Below the pieces are notes generated by a model. The model saw only the letters and a list, made by a program, of their open reading frames with translations, had not been told where the DNA came from and made no database searches. From Leucoraja erinacea (taxonomy: Eukaryota), in the NCBI RefSeq assembly GCF_028641065.1, contig NC_073407.1:21390001-21454000 (forward strand): DNA of 64,000 nucleotides, read 5' to 3'. The translations under genes were made by a program, and so were the position numbers. Positions 24,001-55,280 of the stretch are shown here, in pieces (position 1 is the first letter of the stretch; each line of letters begins with the position of its first letter).

Positions 24001-27000
24001 CTCAGTTTGTACTCGCTAGAATTTAGAAGATTGAGGGGGGATCTTATAGAAACTTACAAAATTCTTATGGGGTTGGACAGGCGAGATGCAGGAAGATTGT
24101 TTCCGATGTTGGGGAAGTCCAGAACAAGGGGTCACAGTTTAAGGATAAGGCGGAAATCTTTTAGGACCGAAATGAGGAAAACGTTTTTTCACACAGAGAG
24201 TGGTGAATCTGTGGAATTCTCTGCCACAGAAGGTAGTTGAGGCCAGTTCATTGGCTATATTTAAGAGGGAGTTGTGGCTAAAGGGATCAGGGGGTATGGA
24301 GAGAAGGCAGGTACAGGATACTGAGTTGGATGATCAGCCATGATCATATTGAATGGTGTTGCAGGCTCGAAGGGCCGAATGGCCTACTCCTGCACCTATT
24401 TTCTATGTTTCTGTACCCTCTCCAAAGTCTCTACATCCTGTAATGGGCCAACCAGAACTGCACACAATACTCCAAATGCTACAATCAAAGTTCTGCAAAG
24501 CTGCAATATGATTTCCTGACCCTGAAGGCAAGCATACCATGCACCACCGCTTTACCACTCTTAACTACTTGTGCTCCCACTTGGAGCTATAGACTTGGAC
24601 CCCACGATCCCTGAAGTGCCCCTTACCTTCACCCCACACTCACCTGTCCTTTTCTTCTCGTTTCTGGATTGATCTTCCTTCTAGGTACAAAGCCCCTGTT
24701 CACAAGGATTCGCACTCTGAAAGAAACAATTACGTAGTTCACCTGGAGAGCATGGTGCAAATGCACTGGCTGAGATTTAACGTTGGCCCTGTTGTCCCAG
24801 GCCAGAGGATGACTGCAGAGAAAAGGTAATCTGCTGTAATGATCACAATCTGGGCTTCACATAAGCCGTGCTAACCTACAGTGGAGGGTTTGGTGGCAGA
24901 GGGGGCTTCAATGAGATCTAGACCCCAACATGGGTTTCACTGGGCAGGTTATCAGCTAGTGTTTGATGACTGCTCATGGTAAGTACTGGATTCTAATAGG
25001 GAAATTCCCAGAAATAGCCCGTAGAATATTTATCGTTTGACTGTTTTTCCCACTGTCAGAACATTGATGTCAAAAATAAACAGTCTCAAATGGAAGTGCT
25101 GGCGGGACTGTGAAAAAGGGTCTCGACCCGAAAGGTCACCCATTCCTTCTCTCCAGAGATGCTGTCTGTCCCGTTGAGTTACTCCAGCTTTTTGTGTCTC
25201 TTCGGTTTAAACCAGCATCTGCAGTTCCTTTCTACTTTGGGTTATTTACTGTAACCTCTTGGATTCTATTTAAGAGGCTGAAGGTCTCCTCATGTTCATG
25301 TGCATAGTCTCAAGGGCCTTGACAGCCTCGTCCTGCTGTTCCCAACAAAATAAACTTTTCCACTCCCCTTACCTACTCTAACCTCACCCCCTTTGAACTA
25401 ATAGCCCTCCAGGCACTCTGCAGCAACCCCAACATTACAATCAAAGCCGCCGACAAAGGAGGTGCCGTGGTAGTCTGGTGCTCTGACAACTCTCAGCCAT
25501 CTCCTCCTACTAATCCTTGGACCATAATCCCACAGACGAGCACCAGGCCTTAATCTCAAACACCATTTCTGATTTAATCACTTCTGGCAGTCTGACTTCT
25601 CCAGCCTCCAACCTTATCGTTTCCCAGCCCCACACAGCCCCGTTCTACCTTCTCTCCAAAATCCATAAACACAACAGCCCTTGTAGACCTATTGTTTCTG
25701 CCTGCTCCTGTCCCACAGAAATAATTTCCACATACCTCGACTCCATCCTATGCCCCCTGGTCCAATCTCTCCTGACCTATGTCCAAGAAACCTCATATGC
25801 CCTTTTCTCTTCAATGATTCCCTCGTCTTTACTATGGAAGTTCAGTCACTCTACACCTCCATCCCCCACCAGGAAGGCCTTAACGTCCTCCATTTCTTCC
25901 TCGGCCGCAGAACCATCCAAGTTCCCTCAGCTATCATTCTTCTCCGCCTAGCAGAGCTGTTCCTCACCCCCAACAACTTCTTCTTTGACTCCTCCCACTT
26001 CCTCCAATTCCAAGGCGTAGCTATGGGCACCCGCATGGACCCCAGTTATGCCTGCCTCTTTGTAGGATACGTTGAACAATCCTTGTTCCAGGTGTACACT
26101 GAACTCTATCTCCGTTACTTTGATGATTGCATCCGTGCTACCTCCTGCACCCATGCAGAACATATGGACTTTATTAACTTCACTACCAATTTTCATCCTG
26201 CACTCAAATTTACTTGGACCTATTGACTGACGAGGGGCTGAACAGCCTCATCCTGCTGTTCCCACCTTAAACCCAAGGGGCTGAATGACCTTGTCCTGTT
26301 GTTCCAGTTTAGTAGACTGGAGGGGCTGAATGGCCTTGTCCTGCTGTTCCCAGCTAAAACGAGGGGTTGAATGGCCTTGTCCTGTTGTCCCAGTTTAGTA
26401 AACTGGAGGGGGTGGGCAGTTTTAACTTGCCCTTCAGGCTCTGGGACCGCTGACGTACCCCAGGTCTGTGCAGTAGAAGGGCGTGACAACGTTGGCACCG
26501 GTGTCTCCGCTGGACGTCAGGCGGCCCGCCTCTCTTGCCTCCTTTTCGGGGTCCACCTGCGACCGGGGCATGATGTAGAGCTCGCTGGAGTGGTCGAACC
26601 TCCCGCGTACCATCACCCGCCTGTACTCCAGCTTCTTCACGTCCAGTTGACTGTGGGGCACAGAGGTGAGAGGTGGAAACGGTGGTGCACAAAACAAGCC
26701 GTAAAACCAAACATGTGTGACGAGGTCAGTATTACCCCGGGAGGGGGGGGGGGGGGAGCAGGGTGGGTCAGTGTGGCCCTGGGGGAGGGTCACTGTCACA
26801 ACAGGGGGAGGGGTTCAATGCCAGTCTTACTTACTCCAGGGGAAGGGGCACGGGCTCCAAGCAGCTTCTCTCTGCTAGAGCCTCGATTAGCCGCAGTTTC
26901 CTTTTGCGACGTTGAACCTTAAGGGAAGGGAGAGCGAGAATGTCAGAGACAGGCATGTAGATCAACATGGCAAGAATCAGCCACACACCCAATTGGACAC

Positions 27001-29564: not shown

Positions 29565-30450
29565 TTGGTCCTCCAAAATATTCCAAATGGAATTTAAACT
29601 GGAGGTGGTGAAGGGAGGGCTTAAGCCAGAAAGGGTTATTGCGAAGAAAGAGCTACTTTAAATTTAGTTGCACCTGGTTGGGTAACTATAGTAGGGTGGA
29701 GATTATTCCATGCTTTAAATGTGCGGGGGAAGAACGAATTGCTGTACACATCTGTCTTTGTAGCTGGGATCACAAATTGGATCGAATGCCCTGGTCTGCT
29801 CCTAATTAGTTTGGGTTTGGTGTAGGTCTTGTAGTCTATGTCGAGCTGACCATTTAACATTTTGTAAAAACAGGTTAAACGGTGAGCTTCACGTCTGTCT
29901 TGGAGAGGGTTCCACCCCAGAGAATTCAGAAGTTTGGTGACACTCGCTTCTCTCTCATAGAAACATAGAAATTAGGTGCAGGAGTAGGCCATTCGGCCCT
30001 TCGAGCCTGCACCGCCATTCAATATGATCATGGCTGATCATCCAAATCAGTATCCTGTACCTGCCTTCTCTCCATACCCCCTGATCCCTTTAGCCACAAG
30101 GGCCACATCTAACTCCCTCTTAAATATAGCCAATGGACTGGCCTCAACTACCTTCTGTGGCAGTGAATTCCAGAGATTCACCACTCTCTGTGTGAAAAAT
30201 GTTTTCCTCATCTCGGTCCTAAAAGATTTCCCCCTTATCCTTAAACTGTGACCCCTAGTTCTGGACTTCCCCAACATCGGGAACAATCTTCCTGCATCTA
30301 GCCTGTCCAACCCCTTAAGAATTTTGTAAGTTTCTATAAGATCCCCCCTCAATCTTCTAAACTGTAGCGAGTACAAACCGTGTCTATCCAGTCTCATAGG
30401 TATTAGTAAGAAATCGAGCTGCCTGTCTTTAGACAGGTTCGATGGAAGAT
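29565..30450 (-). mobile_element. L2/CR1-group LINE 3' end interrupted by a CR1/HER1 fragment (29957-30395)
   Basis: ORF ...IPATKTDVYSNSFFPRTFKAWNNL; same family as 54050-55280 and the 5242-5325 tail. Confidence 0.75.
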
Positions 30451-43870: not shown

Positions 43871-45484
43871 CAGTGCCCTCCATAATATTTGGGACAAAGA
43901 CCCATCATTTATTTATTTGCCTCTGTACTCCACAATTTGAAATTTGTAATAGAAAAAAAAATCACATGTGATTAAAGTGCACATGGTCAGATTTTATTAA
44001 AGACCATTTGTTTTCATTTTGGTTTCACCATGTGGAGATTACAACTGCGTTTTGTACATAGTCCCCCCCCCACCATTTCAGGGCACCATAATGTTTGGGA
44101 CACATGGCTTCACAGGCGTTTATAATTGCTCAGGTGTGTTTAAATGCCTCCTTAATGCAGGTGTAAGAGAGCTCTCAGCACCTAGTCTTTCCTCCAGTCT
44201 TTCCATCACATTTGGAAACTTTTATTGCTGTTTATCAACATGAGGACCAAAGTTGACCCAATGAAAGTCAAATAAGCCATTATGAGACTGAGAAAAAAAG
44301 CATAAAACTGTTAGGGACATTGGTCAAACCTCAGGCTTACCCAAATCAACTATATTGGAACACCATTGGAACACTGGTGAGTTTACTAATCACAAAGGGA
44401 CTGGCAGGCCAAGGAAGACCTCCACAGCTGATGACAGAAGGATTCTCTCTATAATAAAGAAAAATCCCCAAACACCTGTCCAACAGATTAGGAGTCAGGT
44501 GTGGATTTGTCAATGACCACTGTCTGCAGAAGACTTCATGAACAGAAATACAGAAGCTACACTGCAAGATGCAAACCACTGGTTAGCTGCAAAAATACGA
44601 TGACCAGGTTACAGTTTGTTAAGAAGTACTTAAAAGAGCAACCACAGTTCTGGAAAAAGTTCTTGTGGACAGATGAGACGAAGATTAACTTATATCAGCG
44701 TGATGGCAAGAGCAAAGTATGGAGGTGAGAAGGAACTGCCCAAGATCCAAAGCACCTCATCTGCGAAACGTGGTGGGGGTGTTATGGCCTGGGCATGTAT
44801 GGCTGCTGAAGGTATTGGCTCACTTATCTTCATTGATGATACAACTGCTGATGGTAGTAGCATAATGAACTCTGAAGTGTATAGACACATCCTATCTGCT
44901 CAAGTTCAAACAAATGCCTCAAAACTCATTGGTCGGCGGTTCATTGTACAGCAAGACAATGATCCCAAACATACTGCTAAAGCAACAAAGGAGTTTTTCA
45001 AAGCTAAAAAATGGCCAATTCTTGTGTGGCCAAGTCAATCACCCGATCTGAACCCAATTGAGCATGCCTTTTATATGCTGTAGAGAAAACTGAAGGGGAC
45101 TAGCCCCCAAAACAAGCATAAGCTAAAGATGGCTGCAATACAGGCCTGGCAGAGCATCACCAGAGAAGACACCCAGCAACGGGTGATGTCCATGAATCGC
45201 AGACTTCAAGCAGACATTGCACGCAAAGGATATGCAACAAAATACTAAACGTGACTACTTTCATTTGCAAGACATTGCTGTGTCCCAAACATTATGGTGC
45301 CCTGAAATGGGGGTGACTATGTATAAACATTAATTTCTACATGGTGAAACCAAAATGTATAAAAATGGCCTTTATTAGAATTTGACCACATGTGATTTTT
45401 TTCTATTACAAATCCCAAATTGTGGAGTACAGAGTCCAATAAATAAATGATGGGTCTTTGTCACAAACATTATGGAGGACACTG
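43871..45484 (+). mobile_element. Full-length but inactivated Tc1-like DNA transposon
   Basis: TA TSDs and long TIRs starting CAGTGCCCTCCATAAT. Transposase from about 44240 with stops and frameshifts: LWTDETKINLY, GGGVMAWACM, QQDNDPKHTAK...WPSQSPDLNPIE (DD34E). Confidence 0.93.
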
Positions 45485-46014: not shown

Positions 46015-46343
46015 TTTAAGGCTAAGCGCTGGGAAAAGGAGAGAGGTGCGCTATTTTTCACTTGGTGTTACTGTACCTGACTTGCTTAACCATTTAATTT
46101 TCTCTAACTTCAATGAACAAATGCAAAATTAAATCGCCCTCCTGGCATCCTGAGTCACACGCTACCAATTTACCAATTAAACAGCATTGGTTAAGATTCT
46201 TGGCAGCAATCATTTAAAATAAAATGAATGCAAAAAAAAAAAAGATCAGGTACCTTCTGCAGGGATGCGTGCAAGTGAGTTCAGTTTACTGTACACATTT
46301 TCTGTTCCAAATACATATCTTCACTTCAATTCAAAGCAATATC

Positions 46344-46397
46344 GGGGTGGGAGATTGCAACCTTCATGTGGTCCGCCCTGTTTCGACAAATGCAATC
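46344..46397 (+). ncRNA. Predicted minimal HDV-like self-cleaving ribozyme
   Basis: P1 GGGGTGG/CCGCCCT (G1-U wobble), P2 GATTGCA/TGCAATC, P3 ACC/GGT, L3 TTCATGT, 1-bp P1.1, tiny P4 T-TTCG-A, J4/2 CAAA with candidate catalytic C46387. Confidence 0.75.
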
Positions 46398-46470
46398 AAC
46401 CTGGCGTGCACAATCAAATAGAACAAGTCGACAACTTTAGGCTGTGCACGCCATATGCAAGAAGAAGAAG
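46344..46470 (+). mobile_element. 127-bp non-autonomous retroelement with 5' HDV-like ribozyme and (GAA)n tail
   Basis: 11-bp TSD AAAGCAAT(A/T)TC at 46333-46343 and 46471-46481; tail CATATGCAAGAAGAAGAAG; no Pol III A/B boxes seen. Confidence 0.85.
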
Positions 46471-46750
46471 AAAGCAATTTCCATCGTACCCCATCACACA
46501 ACAGATCAATCGTTACATATCTTAGCATTCCAACTTCAGACTATCCCATCCATAACTGCATTCATGTATCAACCCAATTAGTACTATCCAGACACAAGAG
46601 GCATCGGTGACAACCCCATATAAAGTCCATGAATATCTTCCAAGGTAGAGCCTGGATCTGATTTGTCTCCTCTGACTCTCAGAGATGCTGAGAGATCATT
46701 AAACCCCCCGGCTTTGATCAAATACCCCTCTGAAAAAAACCCAACAAGAA

Positions 46751-47510: not shown

Positions 47511-50500
47511 TTAGGGTCTTTTCCCCTCAGCTGCCTCTCCTGTTCTTCTCTCCCTGTCATTTTCCTCTTCATTCTGACTTTCCAACGAGACCTGTCTCAG
47601 CGGCCGCCACTGGCAGGCATGGGAAGTCTCGTCACCTTCTTTACCTGTGGGTTGACTGCTGGCCTTTGCTTTAGAACTGCCCTCTGCCCTCACTAATGGT
47701 TTCCCTGACTCGTTGCTATGTATGCCCTGGTCTACACTGTCGGTTTCCTGGTGGGTTGAGGGCGTGGAATGTACAGCGATTGGGACACGGGTGTTTGGTC
47801 CTGAACGTGGCGTTGCAAAGGCGGATCGTTCAAACCTCGCGTCTTGCTTCGCCCTCAGCTCCTTCCTCGTCCCACTCTGATAGTTATGGTCATTCTGCTC
47901 CTGCCAGGTAACGCAGGGCAGGCCCCTCGACTCGCTGGAATGGGCGCTTGCACTGACCGATGGCATCGGAGTTGGGGAGGGTCTGCCTAGATATGCACCC
48001 TGGTCAGGTTTAGTTTTACTACCGCTTGTCCAACCTAGGTGCGAATGTGTCGCATGTGGCCTCTGCTCTGTACTACAACCTGCATGTGACTGGCTTTCTG
48101 TGGAATATCTATCCTCACTGCTTGTAACATTAATCTTGTCTTTTGGCACTGTGTCACTGAGGAGGTCGGTCAAGAAGACACTCCATGATTTTAATTTGTT
48201 CTTCGTTTTCTCCGAAGGCCTCACTTGAACAGCTTTCGCTTGAAGCTGCCCCACGCCCGGCTCTCTTGAATCAATATATTGCACACACTGTCCCTGGACC
48301 AACAGTTGAATTGTTTTCAAATCAGGAGTTGCCCGTTTCTCCTGCAAGTTCTGGGTGATGCCACTTCCCAAGGGCTCATTAATCTCTCTGTCCAGCAGGA
48401 CTTCACCGTGCAAGTCAAACCAGCTGCTACACCTCTCTTCCCTTTGACAACCCGGGCCGTCAACTAGCAAACTCCCCTGATCGACCCCGGTTGTGGTTTC
48501 AGTTTGGATCGCAGTTGTTGTTCCTCCTACAACCTGTCCGTGTTCAGTCTGGTGCTCCGCACTGCGAACGGCATGAAGGTCCTGAACCAAATCCCTCCCG
48601 TCAATGCTGCCCTTGTCTTCAGCAGCACCACTCCCTGTCCCTCCACACGCCTGGTCTGCTGCCACCTCCGCTTCCTCAAGACCTTGGCCCTTCGCACAAG
48701 CCCCCTCAGTTTGTTGAGAGACCGAAAGCATTTTGCCACCAAGGCCTGGCACTTCTGACGACCTGCTTTCTTCACCTTGCCCTGTAAAACCCTGCACTCC
48801 TTCCTTGGCTTTCAAGCTCTCTTCCGCTACTCGGGCCTTTTCCGCCAAGAATCTCAGAATCTCTTGCTCGATCCCATCATCGCTGTCCCCGGAACTGCTT
48901 TCGCTTGATGCCATGTTTTTCGGATTCTGCCCTACAGCCAGGGTAGATGGAGCAGCAGTTAGCGAGCTCCCCAAGGACTTCCCCATTCCTGCCACCTTGC
49001 CGTGTCCGTCACCTTCCGACGTCTCCACTCTTCTTTTGTTATTCTTACTTTTAACATCCAAGTAGCTTCTACAAACTGCTCGGCTAGTTTTTGACAGGCA
49101 GCTCTTCAGGGGAGCATGGCTCAATGCAAAGCCTTCACCAGCGGCCTTGGGAGTTTGATCACCGAGACCACTGCTTTGCTCGGAGAATGTAAGCACCTCT
49201 GCTCCCGTAAACCGGACTCGCTTCCTGCTCTGGCTCTTAGAGTCCCTTAATCTCTTGCCCAGTCTTTTCCTAGTTTTCAACAGATCCTTGGTTGCAGTAT
49301 CCAGATCCTCATCACTGTCCAACGAGCTACTTTTATCATCTGTCTGCCAAGCGTCATGAAGGGGCTTGTTGTGACAGGACTGTTCACTGGCAGCCCAGGT
49401 GATGGGCGATAACTTGCCTGGATTACTGGTGACTGCCTTGCCGCCGTCCTGGGTGTTATATCCATCAAAAGCATCTCGTTCCAGCAAATCACCTTCAGGT
49501 TTATCCTTGAAGATGACAATGCCAGAGTTAGTCTTGGAAACAGGTGCCTCAGTGATCTTTTGCTGGCTTCCTCTCAGCTCTTCCGTTTCCAGTTTGTGAT
49601 CAATGCTGACGTCATTCCCCAAGCTTTCTTTCGTCAATAACTGCACACGAGATGAAGACGAAGGAGAGGGCAAAGACGGAGGGTTGCTGAGACTATTTTC
49701 CTGCATCAGTTCTGCGGGCAAGTCTCTGCCTGGTTCGTTCAACGTTCCCACTCCATTTGATTTCTGGCTGCTGACGTTCACTTTCAGAGCCAAGTAACTT
49801 TGAATTTCTTTTTCAATGCCGTCACTGCTATCCACAGAACTGTCTTCACTGTCGGAAAAGATGATTTGGTGCGAGCCTGCGGTGGTGCGTTCACTGGGTG
49901 TCGTCCAGCAGTCCGCACGCTCTTCCCCTCCCAGTGGTGTCCGACCCGTGGAGCCATCCGCACCTGTCCGAGCGTTGACCCCACCCTGCTGTCGGGACAA
50001 TTCCGACGGGGTCTCTGTCCGATTTAAACTTATCCCGGAATCGGCGAGTTTTCTTTCGCTTTGCTTTACAAAGTCATCGCTCAACTGGTCGTTGGGGACA
50101 GTCGGCGAAAAGTTGAGGGAATGAGGCGTCTTTGACTCCTGAGACTTGGGCGCACACTGCTTCCGCCTCTTGCTCGGTGGTGTTGCCCGTGCGGCTTCCC
50201 TCCCCTCGCCGGCATCCAACGAAAGATCGGGACCCTTGGAGCAAGGGGAGTTACGAGGCAATACTCCGAGGGCAGAGGGCATATCCCGGGATTTCTTCTG
50301 TTCCAACTGATAAAGTTGGATGGCTTCTTCGATGCCGTCATCACTACTGGAATCAGATAGCTCAGCCCCTGTGGTGATGGAGATAGGCTTTGCCACAGGG
50401 AGCTCAGTCTGCACCTTCCTCTGGATGATACTACTTTTGGAGAGATCCTTAAAGCTGGGCGATGCTGTTGGTTTCTTCTCTTGGGCCGGCTTTTTAAGGC

Positions 50501-51471
50501 CCTTGAGATTCCTTTCATTGTTTTTCCCTGTTTTGCAGATGCTGCCAGCTTCACCCAGGTGGGTGGATTTGATGGCAGTAACGTGAGGGCTGGCATTTGT
50601 TACCAAGGCTTTGACCACACGTGTTTGGCTCCCAGTCCCGGGCTTAACGTACCCCTTCTTGCTCTTCTGTCCCACCCACTTCACCAAATTATCCTTCAGT
50701 GCTGGCACTCCCTCTGTCGGCACCTTGCTGCCGGGATGGCTGGATTCTTTATCCCGCTTGTCCTGCAAGAACTTTTCAATCTCCGCCTGAATGCTCAGTT
50801 CAAACGAGTCGTTGCTGCTGATGCTGGAGGGAGAGGAGCACCTGGAGTCTGCAGCATCCGTTAGGTGGGCAGGCAGCGGGACATCGCTGACAAGGTCGGT
50901 GGGGACCACCTCCCCTCCTAGTGAGGTACCATCGCTGGCATCTGGAGCACAGTCTTCCATAGCCGGATGCATGCCAGGGGGAACTAGCACGTCATGTACG
51001 GCGTTGTTTATCGAGCAGCTCTCTTCTGTTTTCTTCTTCAAGTACTCCTGTATGGCCTCTTCTATACCTCGGTCTACAGACGCATCGCTGTCTGTGTCCA
51101 GGACACAGTGGCTCAGGTTGGATTCCTCCGTGCCAAGCATGAAGGTTGGATACCCAGTCTTTAGATCCTCCACGGCCGCCCCTTTTAAACACATTGATGG
51201 TGCTGTCGTCCAGCACGCCATCGCTCCGCCATTTTGAGACGAGATTTGTCTGAGCGTTACTGCTGGGGTCATTGTTCCTGGCACGAGACGAGTCATGGGG
51301 TTGCAGGTTTTCCACAATCATTTGCACATTTACGTTGATAGCACTTCCAACAGGCGAGAACTTCTCCCCCGGCGGGGAGAAAACCACGGGGAGGCTATAG
51401 CTCTGGGATGCTCCAAAGGGCTGCCAATCTGTCTGTACCACAGAGACAGGTGCCAGGTTCATTAAAAACAT
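47511..51471 (-). CDS. PPP1R26: Protein phosphatase 1 regulatory subunit 26, single large coding exon, about 1319 aa if a 1-nt frameshift near 51100-51290 is corrected
   Basis: N-terminus MFLMNLAPVSVVQTDWQPFG...NVQMIVENLQ (ATG 51471) is in one frame. VLDTDSDASVDRGIEEAIQEYLK, SDSSSDDGIEEAIQLYQLE, SSSLDSDEDLDTATKDLL and the RVxF motif KRVRF are in the 47511-51317 frame. Acceptor TTTTGCAG puts the exon start at 51528. Confidence 0.85.
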
Positions 51472-54049: not shown

Positions 54050-55280
54050 TTCTGGAACAGTGAAAGCAACAGGTGGCCTAAACTTTCTGAGGCGCAACTT
54101 TCATCATTGTTCAACTTCTGTCAAGGAGAAGCTATACTTCACCCTCGTTAGACCTCATTTAACCATATAACCATATAACAATTACAGCACGGAAACAGGC
54201 CATCTCGGCCCTACAAGTCCGTGCCGAACAATTTTTTTCCCCTTAGTCCCACCTGCCTGCACTCATACCATAACCCTCCATTCCCTTCTCATCCATATGC
54301 CTATCCAATTTATTTTTAAATGATACCAATGAACCTGCCTCCACCACTTCCACTGGAAGCTCATTCCACACCGCTACCACTCTCTGAGTAAAGAAGTTCC
54401 CCCTCATATTACCCCTCAACTTCTGTCCCTTAATTCTGAAGTCATGTCCTCTTGTTTGAATCTTCCCTATTCTCAAAGGGAAAAGCTTGTCCACATCAAC
54501 TCTGTCTATCCCTCTCATCATTTTAAAGACCTCTATCAAATCCCCCCTTAACCTTCTGCGCTCCAGAGAATAAAGACCTAACTTATTCAACCTATCTCTG
54601 TAACTTATAGTTGTTGAAACCCAGGCAACATTATAGTAAATCTCCTCTGTACTCTCTCTATTTTGTTGACATCCTTCCTATAATTGGGCGACCAAAATTG
54701 TACACCATACTCCAGATTTGGTCTCACCAATGCCTTGTACAATTTTAACATTATATCCCAGCTTCTATACTCAAATTTGGACTAGGCAGTTGCAGCATGG
54801 GACCCATACACAGATAAAAACATTTCTTCCATCAAACGTGTCCAAAGACAGGCAGCTCGATTTGTTACTAACAACTATGAGAGAGAAGCGAGTGTCACCA
54901 AAGTTCTGAATTCTCTGGGGTGGAACCCTCCCCAAGACGGACGTGAAGCTCACCGTTTGACCTGTTTGTACAAAATGTTAAATGGTCAGCTCGACATAGA
55001 TCACAAGACCCACACCAAACCCAAACCAATTAGAAGCAGACGAGGGCATTCGATCCAATTTGTGATCCCAGCTACAAAGACAGATGTGTACAGCAATTCG
55101 TTCTTCCCCCGCACAATTAAAGCATGGAATAATCTCCACCCAACTATAGTTACCCAACCAGATGCAACTAAATTTAAAGTAGCTCTTTCTTCCCAATAAC
55201 CCTTTCTGGCTTAAGCCCTCCCTTCACCACCTCCAGTTTAAATTCCATTTGGAATATTCTGGAGGACCAAGAACCAAGAA
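54050..55280 (+). mobile_element. L2/CR1-group LINE 3' end with nested CR1 fragment (54161-54772, minus)
   Basis: KEKLYFTLVRPHL is interrupted and resumes to YSNSFFPRTIKAWNNL...; nested piece encodes [18 protein letters not shown] with a (GGTTATAT)n tail. Confidence 0.75.

What the first reader, a model, noticed from the sequence alone, without database searches (positions are those of the whole stretch)
46344..46470. Ribozyme-headed SINE: a 127-bp retroelement that begins at the predicted cleavage site of a minimal HDV-like ribozyme
Seen: the element is bounded by an 11-bp TSD (1 mismatch) and ends in CATATGCAAGAAGAAGAAG. Its first 54 nt map onto the HDV nested double pseudoknot: P1 46344-46350/46373-46379 with a G1-U wobble, perfect 7-bp P2 46353-46359/46391-46397, P3 ACC/GGT, 7-nt L3, single C-G P1.1, P4 reduced to T-TTCG-A, and J4/2 CAAA (C46387 in the C75 position). 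The 3' half is a separate 10-bp hairpin (GGCGTGCACA/TGTGCACGCC). No tRNA/7SL/5S head is visible. Established: HDV-like ribozymes form the 5' ends of R2, RTE and ingi/L1Tc retrotransposons and their short non-autonomous derivatives. Inference: this is a promoterless SINE-like family that self-cleaves out of host Pol II transcripts and is copied by a Vingi/Ingi-like LINE. I do not know of it being described in cartilaginous fish, but I cannot search to confirm that.
Basis: partly seen in the sequence, partly recalled or inferred. Interest (0 to 1): 0.9.

Follow-up and report, generated by a model that had tools for sequence, protein, structure and literature searches.

The report
Ribozyme-headed mini-retroelement in a skate
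This 127-base insertion is one copy of a very abundant short retroelement of skates whose first 54 bases look like a cut-down version of the self-cutting CPEB3/HDV-type RNA enzyme, and every copy starts exactly where that enzyme would cut.

Summary
All helices, the 10-of-11 TSD, the 3' hairpin and the (AAG)4 tail are at the stated coordinates.

A loose HDV descriptor finds only this site in the window, but 0.85 hits are expected per shuffled window. The fold alone is therefore not significant. Two other results carry the case.

- **A huge family with one 5' end.** Word depth is 1.3-4.4 million on the element against 13-50 in the flanks, in three DNA runs. In 261-331 contigs per run the likeness stops exactly before G46344.
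- **A CPEB3-type core.** Counted from G1, the head matches the CPEB3 ribozyme at all 12 unpaired core letters named in passages of PMC4836649, using the family's majority letters; this copy matches 11 of 12. P4 is replaced by 5 nt.

Against this: Rfam gives no hit, the poly(A) RNA run shows no pile-up of starts at G1, covariation could not be tested, and cleavage is untested. The Vingi partner was not tested here.

The host is a skate. First readers of this scan noted the same family at least 21 times on other DNA of this genome. Ribozyme-headed non-autonomous retroelements are known, so I class this as a new member of a known kind.

Novelty: the claim of a new class is too strong. A 2019 review already states that some non-autonomous SINEs use HDV-like ribozymes (PMC6765202, passage).

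The parts
46333..46343 (+). left target-site duplication, AAAGCAATATC
   Evidence: 10 of 11 alike with 46471-46481, only at offset 0
46344..46397 (+). 54-nt head: P4-less HDV/CPEB3-type ribozyme fold. The predicted cut lies between C46343 and G46344
   Evidence: pairings; CPEB3 letters; family 5' end at 46344
46344..46350 (+). P1 5' strand (positions 1-7)
   Evidence: 7 pairs with 46373-46379, including G1.U36 and U5.G32
46351..46352 (+). J1/2 (GA). 46351 is A in about 30% of family depth
46353..46359 (+). P2 5' strand (positions 10-16)
   Evidence: 7 Watson-Crick pairs with 46391-46397
46360..46372 (+). P3 (ACC/GGT) enclosing the 7-nt L3, 46363-46369. Position 46367 is T here and C in about 89-92% of family depth
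46373..46379 (+). P1 3' strand (positions 30-36). 46375 G>A in about 15% of depth turns U.G into U-A
46380..46381 (+). G37 and U38: the 3' side of P1.1 (G-C with C46365, U-U with U46364)
   Evidence: PMC4836649 passages
46382..46386 (+). 5-nt linker UUCGA in the place of P4
   Evidence: inference
46387..46390 (+). J4/2. C46387 sits at the place of the catalytic C57/C75. 46388 is A here, G in about 61% and T in about 20% of family depth in X1
46391..46397 (+). P2 3' strand (positions 48-54)
46403..46452 (+). 3' hairpin, 10-bp stem GGCGTGCACA/TGTGCACGCC. Its loop (46413-46431) is the variable part of the family, and most copies carry 4-10 extra letters there
   Evidence: tables 4, 7
46459..46470 (+). 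(AAG)4 simple-repeat tail, longer in other copies
   Evidence: table 7 (loose ends behind 46472 begin GAAGAA)
46471..46481 (+). right target-site duplication, AAAGCAATTTC

Best explanation
Window 46344-46470 is one old, slightly shortened copy of a very abundant, non-coding, two-part non-LTR retroelement of skates.

Its 3' part is a hairpin plus an (AAG)n tail. I infer that this is the handle by which a LINE reverse transcriptase copies the RNA into a nicked target, leaving the 11-bp duplication.

Its 5' part, 54 nt, is a CPEB3-type HDV-like ribozyme in which P4 is replaced by five bases. I infer that source copies, which have no promoter of their own, are transcribed as parts of longer transcripts. 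The head then cuts the RNA just before G1. This gives every new copy the same first base.

Shown: the copy's anatomy, the family, its common 5' end, and the sameness of the core letters with CPEB3.

Inferred: self-cleavage, read-through transcription of source copies, and the partner LINE.

This copy carries two CpG-decay changes in the core (L3 position 24, J4/2 position 2) and may itself be weak or dead.
For: (1) Retroposition. The TSD is 10 of 11 alike, flush with both ends, and the tail is (AAG)4.

(2) Family. Word depth is 2.55, 1.26 and 4.41 million on the head against 19.1, 14.7 and 50 in the flanks in X1, X3 and X7. X1 laid 11,593 contig records. Depth at 46343 is 5,435 against 1,172,862 at 46351 in X1.

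(3) Ends. Loose ends 'before 46344' occur in 331, 313 and 261 contigs, with unlike flanks (agreement 0.34-0.35). No other 5' boundary is among the listed rows; 492 further rows are not shown. The 3' loose ends lie at 46470-46472.

(4) Core. Passages of PMC4836649 name these CPEB3 letters: G17 C18 G19, U20 U21 C22 A23, G25 U26, G37 U38, a P1.1 of one G-C plus one U-U, and a 4-nt J4/2 of C57 G58 A59 A60. Counted from G46344 the element has P3 at 17-19, L3 at 20-26 and G37 U38. Its J4/2 is 4 nt. All 12 named unpaired letters are the same with the family's majority letters, and 11 of 12 in this copy.

[quoted passage not shown] Function alone therefore does not demand such sameness.

(6) P4-less HDV-like ribozymes exist. 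P4 is absent in the R2 ribozymes of five silkmoths, and self-cleavage was measured for one of them. Minimal HDV-like ribozymes are also reported (abstract and reference list).

(7) With the majority letters, the nested minimum-energy fold of nt 1-54 is exactly P1+P3 (-12.4 kcal/mol). P2 alone is -4.8.

(8) Of the 5 head positions with a variant at 10% or more, 4 are unpaired and 1 (46375) keeps its pair. None is at C46387.

(9) No Pol III head: Rfam and ARAGORN give nothing, and the best A-box and B-box matches have 3 mismatches.
Against: - Cleavage has not been tested.
- Rfam's HDV-family and CPEB3 models give no hit even at E up to 10 on 65 bases. Those models hold no pseudoknots and expect a P4.
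- In the oligo-dT RNA run X24 (about 5% of the run read), 1,139 reads run through G1 into unlike upstream sequence. Table 6 lists no place where molecules begin or end. Reads lie equally on both strands, 91% run on into unlike sequence, and the flanks of this copy have no reads. Expression looks passive, with no sign of cutting in that library. Short non-polyadenylated products would be lost there, and the table's threshold is a fifth of the depth.
- No compensatory change on both sides of a pair was seen. Paired positions simply do not vary at 10% or more, which says nothing either way.
- Sameness of core letters can arise by convergence, as discussed for R2 and HDV in PMC3774820.
- Letter 24 of CPEB3 was not named in the passages I saw.
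- My descriptor shows that the bare fold is expected about once per window by chance.
Confidence: 0.7

Rival explanations
1. The head descends from a LINE's 5' ribozyme but no longer cuts now that P4 is lost. It is kept for another reason, such as an internal Pol II promoter, a protein-binding site or a protected 5' end, as in the dual promoter/ribozyme Pr77 of L1Tc. On this reading the common 5' end is a transcription start.
For: - No starts pile up at G1, and many RNA reads run through G1.
- The first 77 nt of L1Tc/NARTc are both an internal promoter and an HDV-like ribozyme (abstract of PMC3383444, listing).
- About 10^5-fold depth seems a lot for an element that depends on chance read-through.
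Against: - The catalytic C, the U20/G25 letters, P1.1 and all helices are kept family-wide with no variant at 10% or more.
- P4-less relatives cleave.
- The start lies to the base at the predicted cut.
Confidence: 0.17
2. It is an ordinary Pol III SINE whose head comes from a small RNA not yet recognised. The HDV-like fit would then be a coincidence of a structured head.
For: - SINE size, copy number and a sharp 5' end are typical of Pol III SINEs.
- The Rfam ribozyme models are silent.
Against: - No tRNA.
- No Rfam small-RNA family at E up to 10.
- The best A-box and B-box matches have 3 mismatches.
- 12 of 12 named core letters match CPEB3 in register.
Confidence: 0.08
3. It is a chance match: a hairpin-rich 5' end that happens to fit a permissive double-pseudoknot descriptor.
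For: 0.85 descriptor hits are expected per shuffled window against 1 found. The whole-element fold has z = -1.07.
Against: The hit starts at the base that the TSD and hundreds of other copies mark as the element's first base. Its unpaired letters equal those of CPEB3. A core-letter scan of both strands found no second full match: 5 weaker hairpins, none with both the P1.1 C and the following G-U.
Confidence: 0.03

Closest known systems
Mammalian CPEB3 ribozyme (HDV-like, intronic)
   Same: - 7-bp P1 starting with G1 on a wobble with U.
- P3 at positions 17-19 and a 7-nt L3 at 20-26, with U20, U21, C22, A23, G25 and U26.
- G37 and U38 giving a P1.1 of one G-C plus one U-U.
- A 4-nt J4/2 of C-G-A-A.

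The CPEB3 letters come from passages of PMC4836649.
   Different: - P4, which spans positions 39-56 in CPEB3 numbering, is replaced by 5 nt.
- The P1, P2 and P3 helix letters differ.
- It is multi-copy and heads a retroelement, not a single conserved intronic locus.
[quoted passage not shown]
- The Rfam CPEB3 model does not score it.
SIDEs of R2, and NARTc/RIME of L1Tc/ingi (two-part non-autonomous LINEs with an HDV-like ribozyme at the 5' end)
   Same: A 5' ribozyme end joined to a 3' end recognised by the LINE enzyme, with no ORF. The 5' end is made by self-cleavage of a co-transcript (abstracts of PMC3414825 and PMC3383444; PMC5786205 passages).
   Different: - Much shorter: 127 bp here, about 140 for most copies.
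- Dispersed with variable targets, not in rDNA.
- A vertebrate host, and depth about 10^5 times the flanks.
- The parent LINE was not identified here.
Vingi-clade LINEs and their internally deleted derivatives
   Same: Vingi is one of four clades reported to give two-part non-autonomous LINEs (PMC5786205 passage). Other first readers of this scan report a Vingi-like LINE with the same 3' end and a fuller ribozyme head (unchecked).
   Different: Vingi is not among the six clades listed as having a 5' ribozyme in that 2018 paper. No Vingi sequence was compared here. The Vingi paper itself (PMC3002237) is not held.
Minimal (P4-less) HDV-like ribozymes: silkmoth R2 ribozymes, microbiome and theta ribozymes
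   Same: A double pseudoknot without a P4 stem. Activity was shown for some (PMC3774820 passage; abstract of 10.1101/2023.06.13.544163).
   Different: The silkmoth R2 forms have very long J1/2 loops. The theta ribozymes sit next to phage tRNAs. None heads a SINE-sized vertebrate repeat.

Membership tests
HDV-like / CPEB3-type self-cleaving ribozyme | Nested double pseudoknot: P1 and P2 interleaved, with P3 and P1.1 inside | tested here: met
   P1 7 bp, P2 7 bp, P3 3 bp, P1.1 C-G (+U-U), in the right order and spacing
HDV-like / CPEB3-type self-cleaving ribozyme | G1 on a G.U wobble at the base of P1, directly 3' of the cut | tested here: met
   G46344 opposite T46379
HDV-like / CPEB3-type self-cleaving ribozyme | Catalytic cytosine in J4/2, and the U20/G25 letters in L3 | tested here: met
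   C46387, U46363, G46368. No variant at 10% or more at these places. Letters as in PMC4836649
HDV-like / CPEB3-type self-cleaving ribozyme | Site-specific self-cleavage | not testable with these tools
   The only indirect data are from the poly(A) RNA run X24, which shows no pile-up of starts at G1 and 1,139 read-through reads
HDV-like / CPEB3-type self-cleaving ribozyme | Match to the curated Rfam models of the family | tested here: not met
   no HDV, CPEB3 or drz family at E up to 10. The models lack pseudoknots and include P4, so this is weak evidence against
HDV-like / CPEB3-type self-cleaving ribozyme | Compensatory covariation in the helices | tested here: inconclusive
   the only paired place that varies at 10% or more is 46375 (U.G to U-A). 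No copy sequences could be fetched
Non-LTR retroposon, two-part non-autonomous LINE / SINE-like | Target-site duplication and a 3' simple-repeat or A-rich tail | tested here: met
Non-LTR retroposon, two-part non-autonomous LINE / SINE-like | Many dispersed copies with a common 5' end and unlike flanks | tested here: met
   tables 2, 3, 7
Non-LTR retroposon, two-part non-autonomous LINE / SINE-like | An autonomous LINE sharing the 5' and 3' ends | not tested
   None in this window. Only unchecked scan notes exist
Classical Pol III SINE (tRNA, 5S, 7SL or snRNA head) | Head derived from a small RNA gene, with internal A and B boxes | tested here: not met
   (no family, no tRNA). (3 mismatches in the best A-box and in the best B-box match)

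The most novel reading that the evidence does not exclude
The mammalian CPEB3 ribozyme is a domesticated head of this retroelement lineage. A LINE/SINE family with a CPEB3-type 5' ribozyme was already present in early jawed vertebrates, and one copy in the CPEB3 intron was kept in mammals. The skate family would then be the first non-mammalian outgroup of the CPEB3 ribozyme. Its 54-nt form would be the smallest natural CPEB3-type ribozyme.
Probability: 0.25. Interest if true: 0.85.

Novelty: new member of a known kind. Interest (0 to 1): 0.65.

Why it matters
If the head cuts, skates carry on the order of 10^5 depth-equivalents of a 54-nt self-cleaving RNA. That would be a vertebrate genome in which a ribozyme, not a Pol III promoter, defines the ends of its most abundant short repeat.

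It would give a natural set of thousands of variants of a minimal CPEB3-type ribozyme. It would extend 5' ribozymes to another LINE lineage, possibly Vingi.

It would also make a long-standing question testable: where the mammalian CPEB3 ribozyme came from. That ribozyme has no known relatives outside mammals (PMC8233481 passage).

Copies in introns and UTRs could also cut host transcripts.

Tried and rejected
- **Second copies in the window.** None found by pattern search with 3 mismatches, by short-word BLAST or by a core-letter scan.
- **Copies from public collections.** 0 hits in viral, metagenome (two scans) and prokaryote genome contigs. These hold little or no skate DNA, so the blank means nothing for the family.
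- **More skate DNA through an exact-protein look-up.** Alignment, R-scape-like counts and a covariance model were therefore not possible, and build_rna_model and the count of structure pairs were not used.
- **Rfam.** Nothing but a chance plastid match at E 7.6.
- **tRNA head.** None.
- **MITE or DNA transposon.** Rejected. There are no terminal inverted repeats, the TSD is 11 bp and the tail is a simple repeat.
- **5'-truncated LINE tail.** Rejected, because the 5' ends are not ragged.
- **Prior art.** These searches found no description of this element:
  - 'HDV-like ribozyme/SINE/shark'
  - 'HDV-like/ribozyme/non-autonomous/retrotransposon/SINE'
  - 'Vingi/ribozyme' (6 papers, none on this)
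  - 'CPEB3-like/CPEB3 ribozyme/retrotransposon/LINE/origin'
  - 'ribozyme/Leucoraja' (1 paper, irrelevant)
  - 'HDV-like/cartilaginous fish' (1, irrelevant)
  - 'ribozyme/skate/retrotransposon' (1, irrelevant)

  One search was badly framed and useless.
- **What I could not see.** Repbase and Dfam could not be consulted. Webb 2009, Ruminski 2011 and Kojima 2011 are not held. Their texts and supplementary lists of HDV-like ribozymes, and the figures of PMC4836649 (letter 24), may bear on novelty and on the letter count.

Full report
**What is in the sequence.**
Counting G46344 as position 1, a script tabulated every pair.
- P1 is positions 1-7 with 30-36: seven pairs, two of them wobbles (G1.U36 and U5.G32).
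- P2 is positions 10-16 with 48-54: seven Watson-Crick pairs.
- P3 is positions 17-19 with 27-29 (ACC/GGT).
- L3 has seven bases, positions 20-26.
- C22-G37 pair, with U21 and U38 beside them.
- Five bases (UUCGA) stand where P4 would be.
- J4/2 has four bases, beginning with C46387.
- Downstream lies a 10-bp hairpin (46403-46412 / 46443-46452), which the minimum-energy fold also shows.
- Then come ATATGC and (AAG)4.
- The 11 bases before G1 recur right after the tail with one mismatch. They fit only in that register: 10 of 11 at offset 0, and at most 5 of 11 at eight other offsets.

**Is the fold more than chance?**
By itself it is not. A deliberately loose HDV descriptor found one site on both strands of the window, this one. 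The descriptor required a 7-bp P1 with at most 2 wobbles, a 3-bp P3, an L3 of 5-9 nt, a P2 of 6 bp or more, one P1.1 pair and a C in J4/2. Forty dinucleotide-preserving shuffles gave a mean of 0.85. The whole element is not unusually stable (z = -1.07). Rfam gives no HDV, CPEB3 or drz hit at E up to 10, on 301 or on 65 bases. The case must therefore rest on other evidence.

**The family.**
I laid the contigs of three DNA runs and the raw reads of one oligo-dT RNA run on 46100-46700 at 80% likeness. The DNA runs were X1 of organism A, X3 of organism B and X7 of organism C. The RNA run was X24 of organism A.
- Summed word depth is 19.1, 14.7 and 50 in the flanks.
- On the head it is 2.55, 1.26 and 4.41 million, a ratio of about 0.9-1.3 x 10^5. 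The tool warns that this is not a copy number.
- X1 alone laid 11,593 contig records.
- The edge is sharp. Depth at 46343 is 5,435 against 1,172,862 at 46351 in X1.
- The best-supported loose ends on the 5' side all lie 'before 46344': 331, 313 and 261 contigs and 1,139 RNA reads. Their loose letters agree only at 0.34-0.43, so the flanks are unrelated. A further 492 rows were not shown.
- On the 3' side the loose ends lie behind 46470-46472. Many begin GAAGAA, which means longer tails.

Contigs of B and C run from the single-copy 5' flank 23-26 letters into the element, with 4 and 5 differences. Others run from the 3' flank 9-25 letters into it. No contig skips the element. The insertion is thus probably shared by A, B and C, although these pieces fall short of the tool's 31-letter rule for bridging.

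Most copies carry 4-10 more letters in the hairpin loop (tables 4 and 7), so this copy is a short variant.

**Majority letters.**
This copy differs from most of the family at CpG sites (X1 shares).
- 46367 is T here and C in 88.6% of depth.
- 46388 is A here, G in 60.6% and T in 19.7%.
- 46456 is T here and C in 79.7%.

In the head, five places vary at 10% or more.
- 46351 lies in J1/2.
- 46367 lies in L3.
- 46385 lies in the P4 substitute.
- 46388 lies in J4/2.
- 46375 lies in P1, where G>A at 15.4% turns U.G into U-A.

No paired place is broken at that level, and C46387 does not vary. This is compatible with a constraint on source copies but is not covariation. Invariant pairs say nothing either way.

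With the two majority letters put in by index, the nested minimum-energy fold of nt 1-54 is exactly P1+P3 (-12.4 kcal/mol), and P2 alone is -4.8. In this copy a competing inner helix is marginally better, at -12.9.

**The core is that of CPEB3.**
Passages of Skilandat et al. 2016 (PMC4836649; I saw passages only, not the figures) name these CPEB3 ribozyme letters:
- G17, C18 and G19 in P3;
- U20, U21, C22, A23, G25 and U26 in L3;
- G28;
- G37 and U38;
- a '4-nt long J4/2 linker' with C57, G58, A59 and A60.

The U20.G25 wobble presents the catalytic Mg2+. The deep-mutational paper PMC9901934 (passages) likewise speaks of a single-base-pair T1 plus a U:U.

Counted from G46344, the element has P3 at 17-19, L3 at 20-26 and G37 U38. 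Its J4/2 is four bases long.
- All 12 unpaired letters named in those passages are the same when the family's majority letters are used.
- In this copy 11 of 12 are the same; the second J4/2 letter is A.
- Letter 24 is not named in what I saw.

The head is colinear with CPEB3 up to position 38 and differs mainly in having 5 bases in place of the 18 of P4. Passages of Eickbush and Eickbush 2013 (PMC3774820) say that R2 ribozymes share only the catalytic C and four other fixed positions. Function alone therefore does not force such sameness. [quoted passage not shown] That paper further reports that the P4 stem is absent in five silkmoth R2 ribozymes, one of which was shown to self-cleave. Minimal HDV-like ribozymes are also on record (abstract and reference list of 10.1101/2023.06.13.544163).

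**Evidence against cutting in vivo.**
In the oligo-dT RNA run (about 5% of the run read) the element is covered about 1,000-fold on each strand. Of the reads, 91% run on into unlike sequence, and 1,139 run through G1. The table of places where molecules begin or end is empty. The flanks of this copy have no reads. Expression thus looks like passive transcription of copies inside other transcripts, in both directions. Nothing shows cleavage.

The library would lose short non-polyadenylated products, the table needs a fifth of the depth, and most copies are decayed. This is therefore weak evidence, but it is the only in vivo evidence and it does not support the model.

**No Pol III head.**
ARAGORN finds no tRNA. 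Rfam finds no small-RNA family. The best A-box and B-box matches each have three mismatches.

**Host and neighbourhood.**
The 1,268-codon ORF at 47511-51317 on the minus strand is PPP1R26. It is 95% identical to Amblyraja radiata and 78% to Rhinoraja longicauda. The window therefore comes from a skate close to, but not the same as, A. radiata. The element lies about 1 kb beyond the stop codon, on the other strand.

**What is known.**
[quoted passage not shown] So are two-part non-autonomous derivatives of RTE, Ingi, Vingi and R2 (Kojima 2018, PMC5786205, passages).
- Vingi is not listed there as having a ribozyme.
[quoted passage not shown] It also says that hundreds of intergenic HDV-like copies with conserved downstream and differing upstream sequence had been seen (PMC6765202, passages).
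- The kind is therefore known.
- My searches found no description of this skate family. Repbase, Dfam, the papers of Webb 2009, Ruminski 2011 and Kojima 2011, and all supplements were out of reach.

**Earlier notes of this scan.**
At least 21 first-reader notes on other DNA of this genome describe the same family. Some name a fuller, CPEB3-like ribozyme at the 5' end of a Vingi-like LINE, and a Vingi-like LINE with the same 3' end. None is marked as checked, and I could not read that DNA. I treat the partner as a lead only.

**Verdict.**
The element is a real, very abundant, ribozyme-headed two-part retroelement of skates. Its head is a P4-less CPEB3-type HDV-like ribozyme by anatomy and core letters. 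The family's first base is the predicted cleavage product's first base. Self-cleavage, read-through transcription of source copies and the Vingi partner are inferred. I class it as a new member of a known kind. Its added interest is that it may be the first relative of the CPEB3 ribozyme outside mammals.

Noticed in passing
window 47511-51317 (-): A single 1,268-codon ORF is the large exon of PPP1R26. It is 95% identical to Amblyraja radiata and 78% to Rhinoraja longicauda, which places the window in a skate.
   Followed up: partly
window 46413-46431, inside the element: The hairpin loop is the family's variable part. Other copies insert ATCAAATAAG or AACGGAAG behind 46412, TGTC behind 46428, or TCCT behind 46430. 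The RNA run shows different subfamily shares from the DNA runs, for example T at 46388 in about 46% of RNA reads against about 20% of DNA depth.
   Followed up: partly
window 46472 -> 46344 (joint in run X7): One contig of organism C joins the end of one element to the start of the next ('goes back 129'), which is a head-to-tail dimer (table 5).
   Followed up: no
window 30047-30397 (-) and 54243-54590 (-): Two similar 115-116-codon ORFs look like the C-terminal ends of one LINE-type family.
   Followed up: no
window 44673-45083 (+): A 136-codon ORF looks like a Tc1/mariner transposase fragment.
   Followed up: no
window 25517-26226 (+): Two overlapping ORFs look like reverse-transcriptase pieces of another retroelement.
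   Followed up: no
window 46205-46246: An A-rich run upstream of the element shows a small bump in depth in all three DNA runs. It may be the tail of another old repeat.
   Followed up: no
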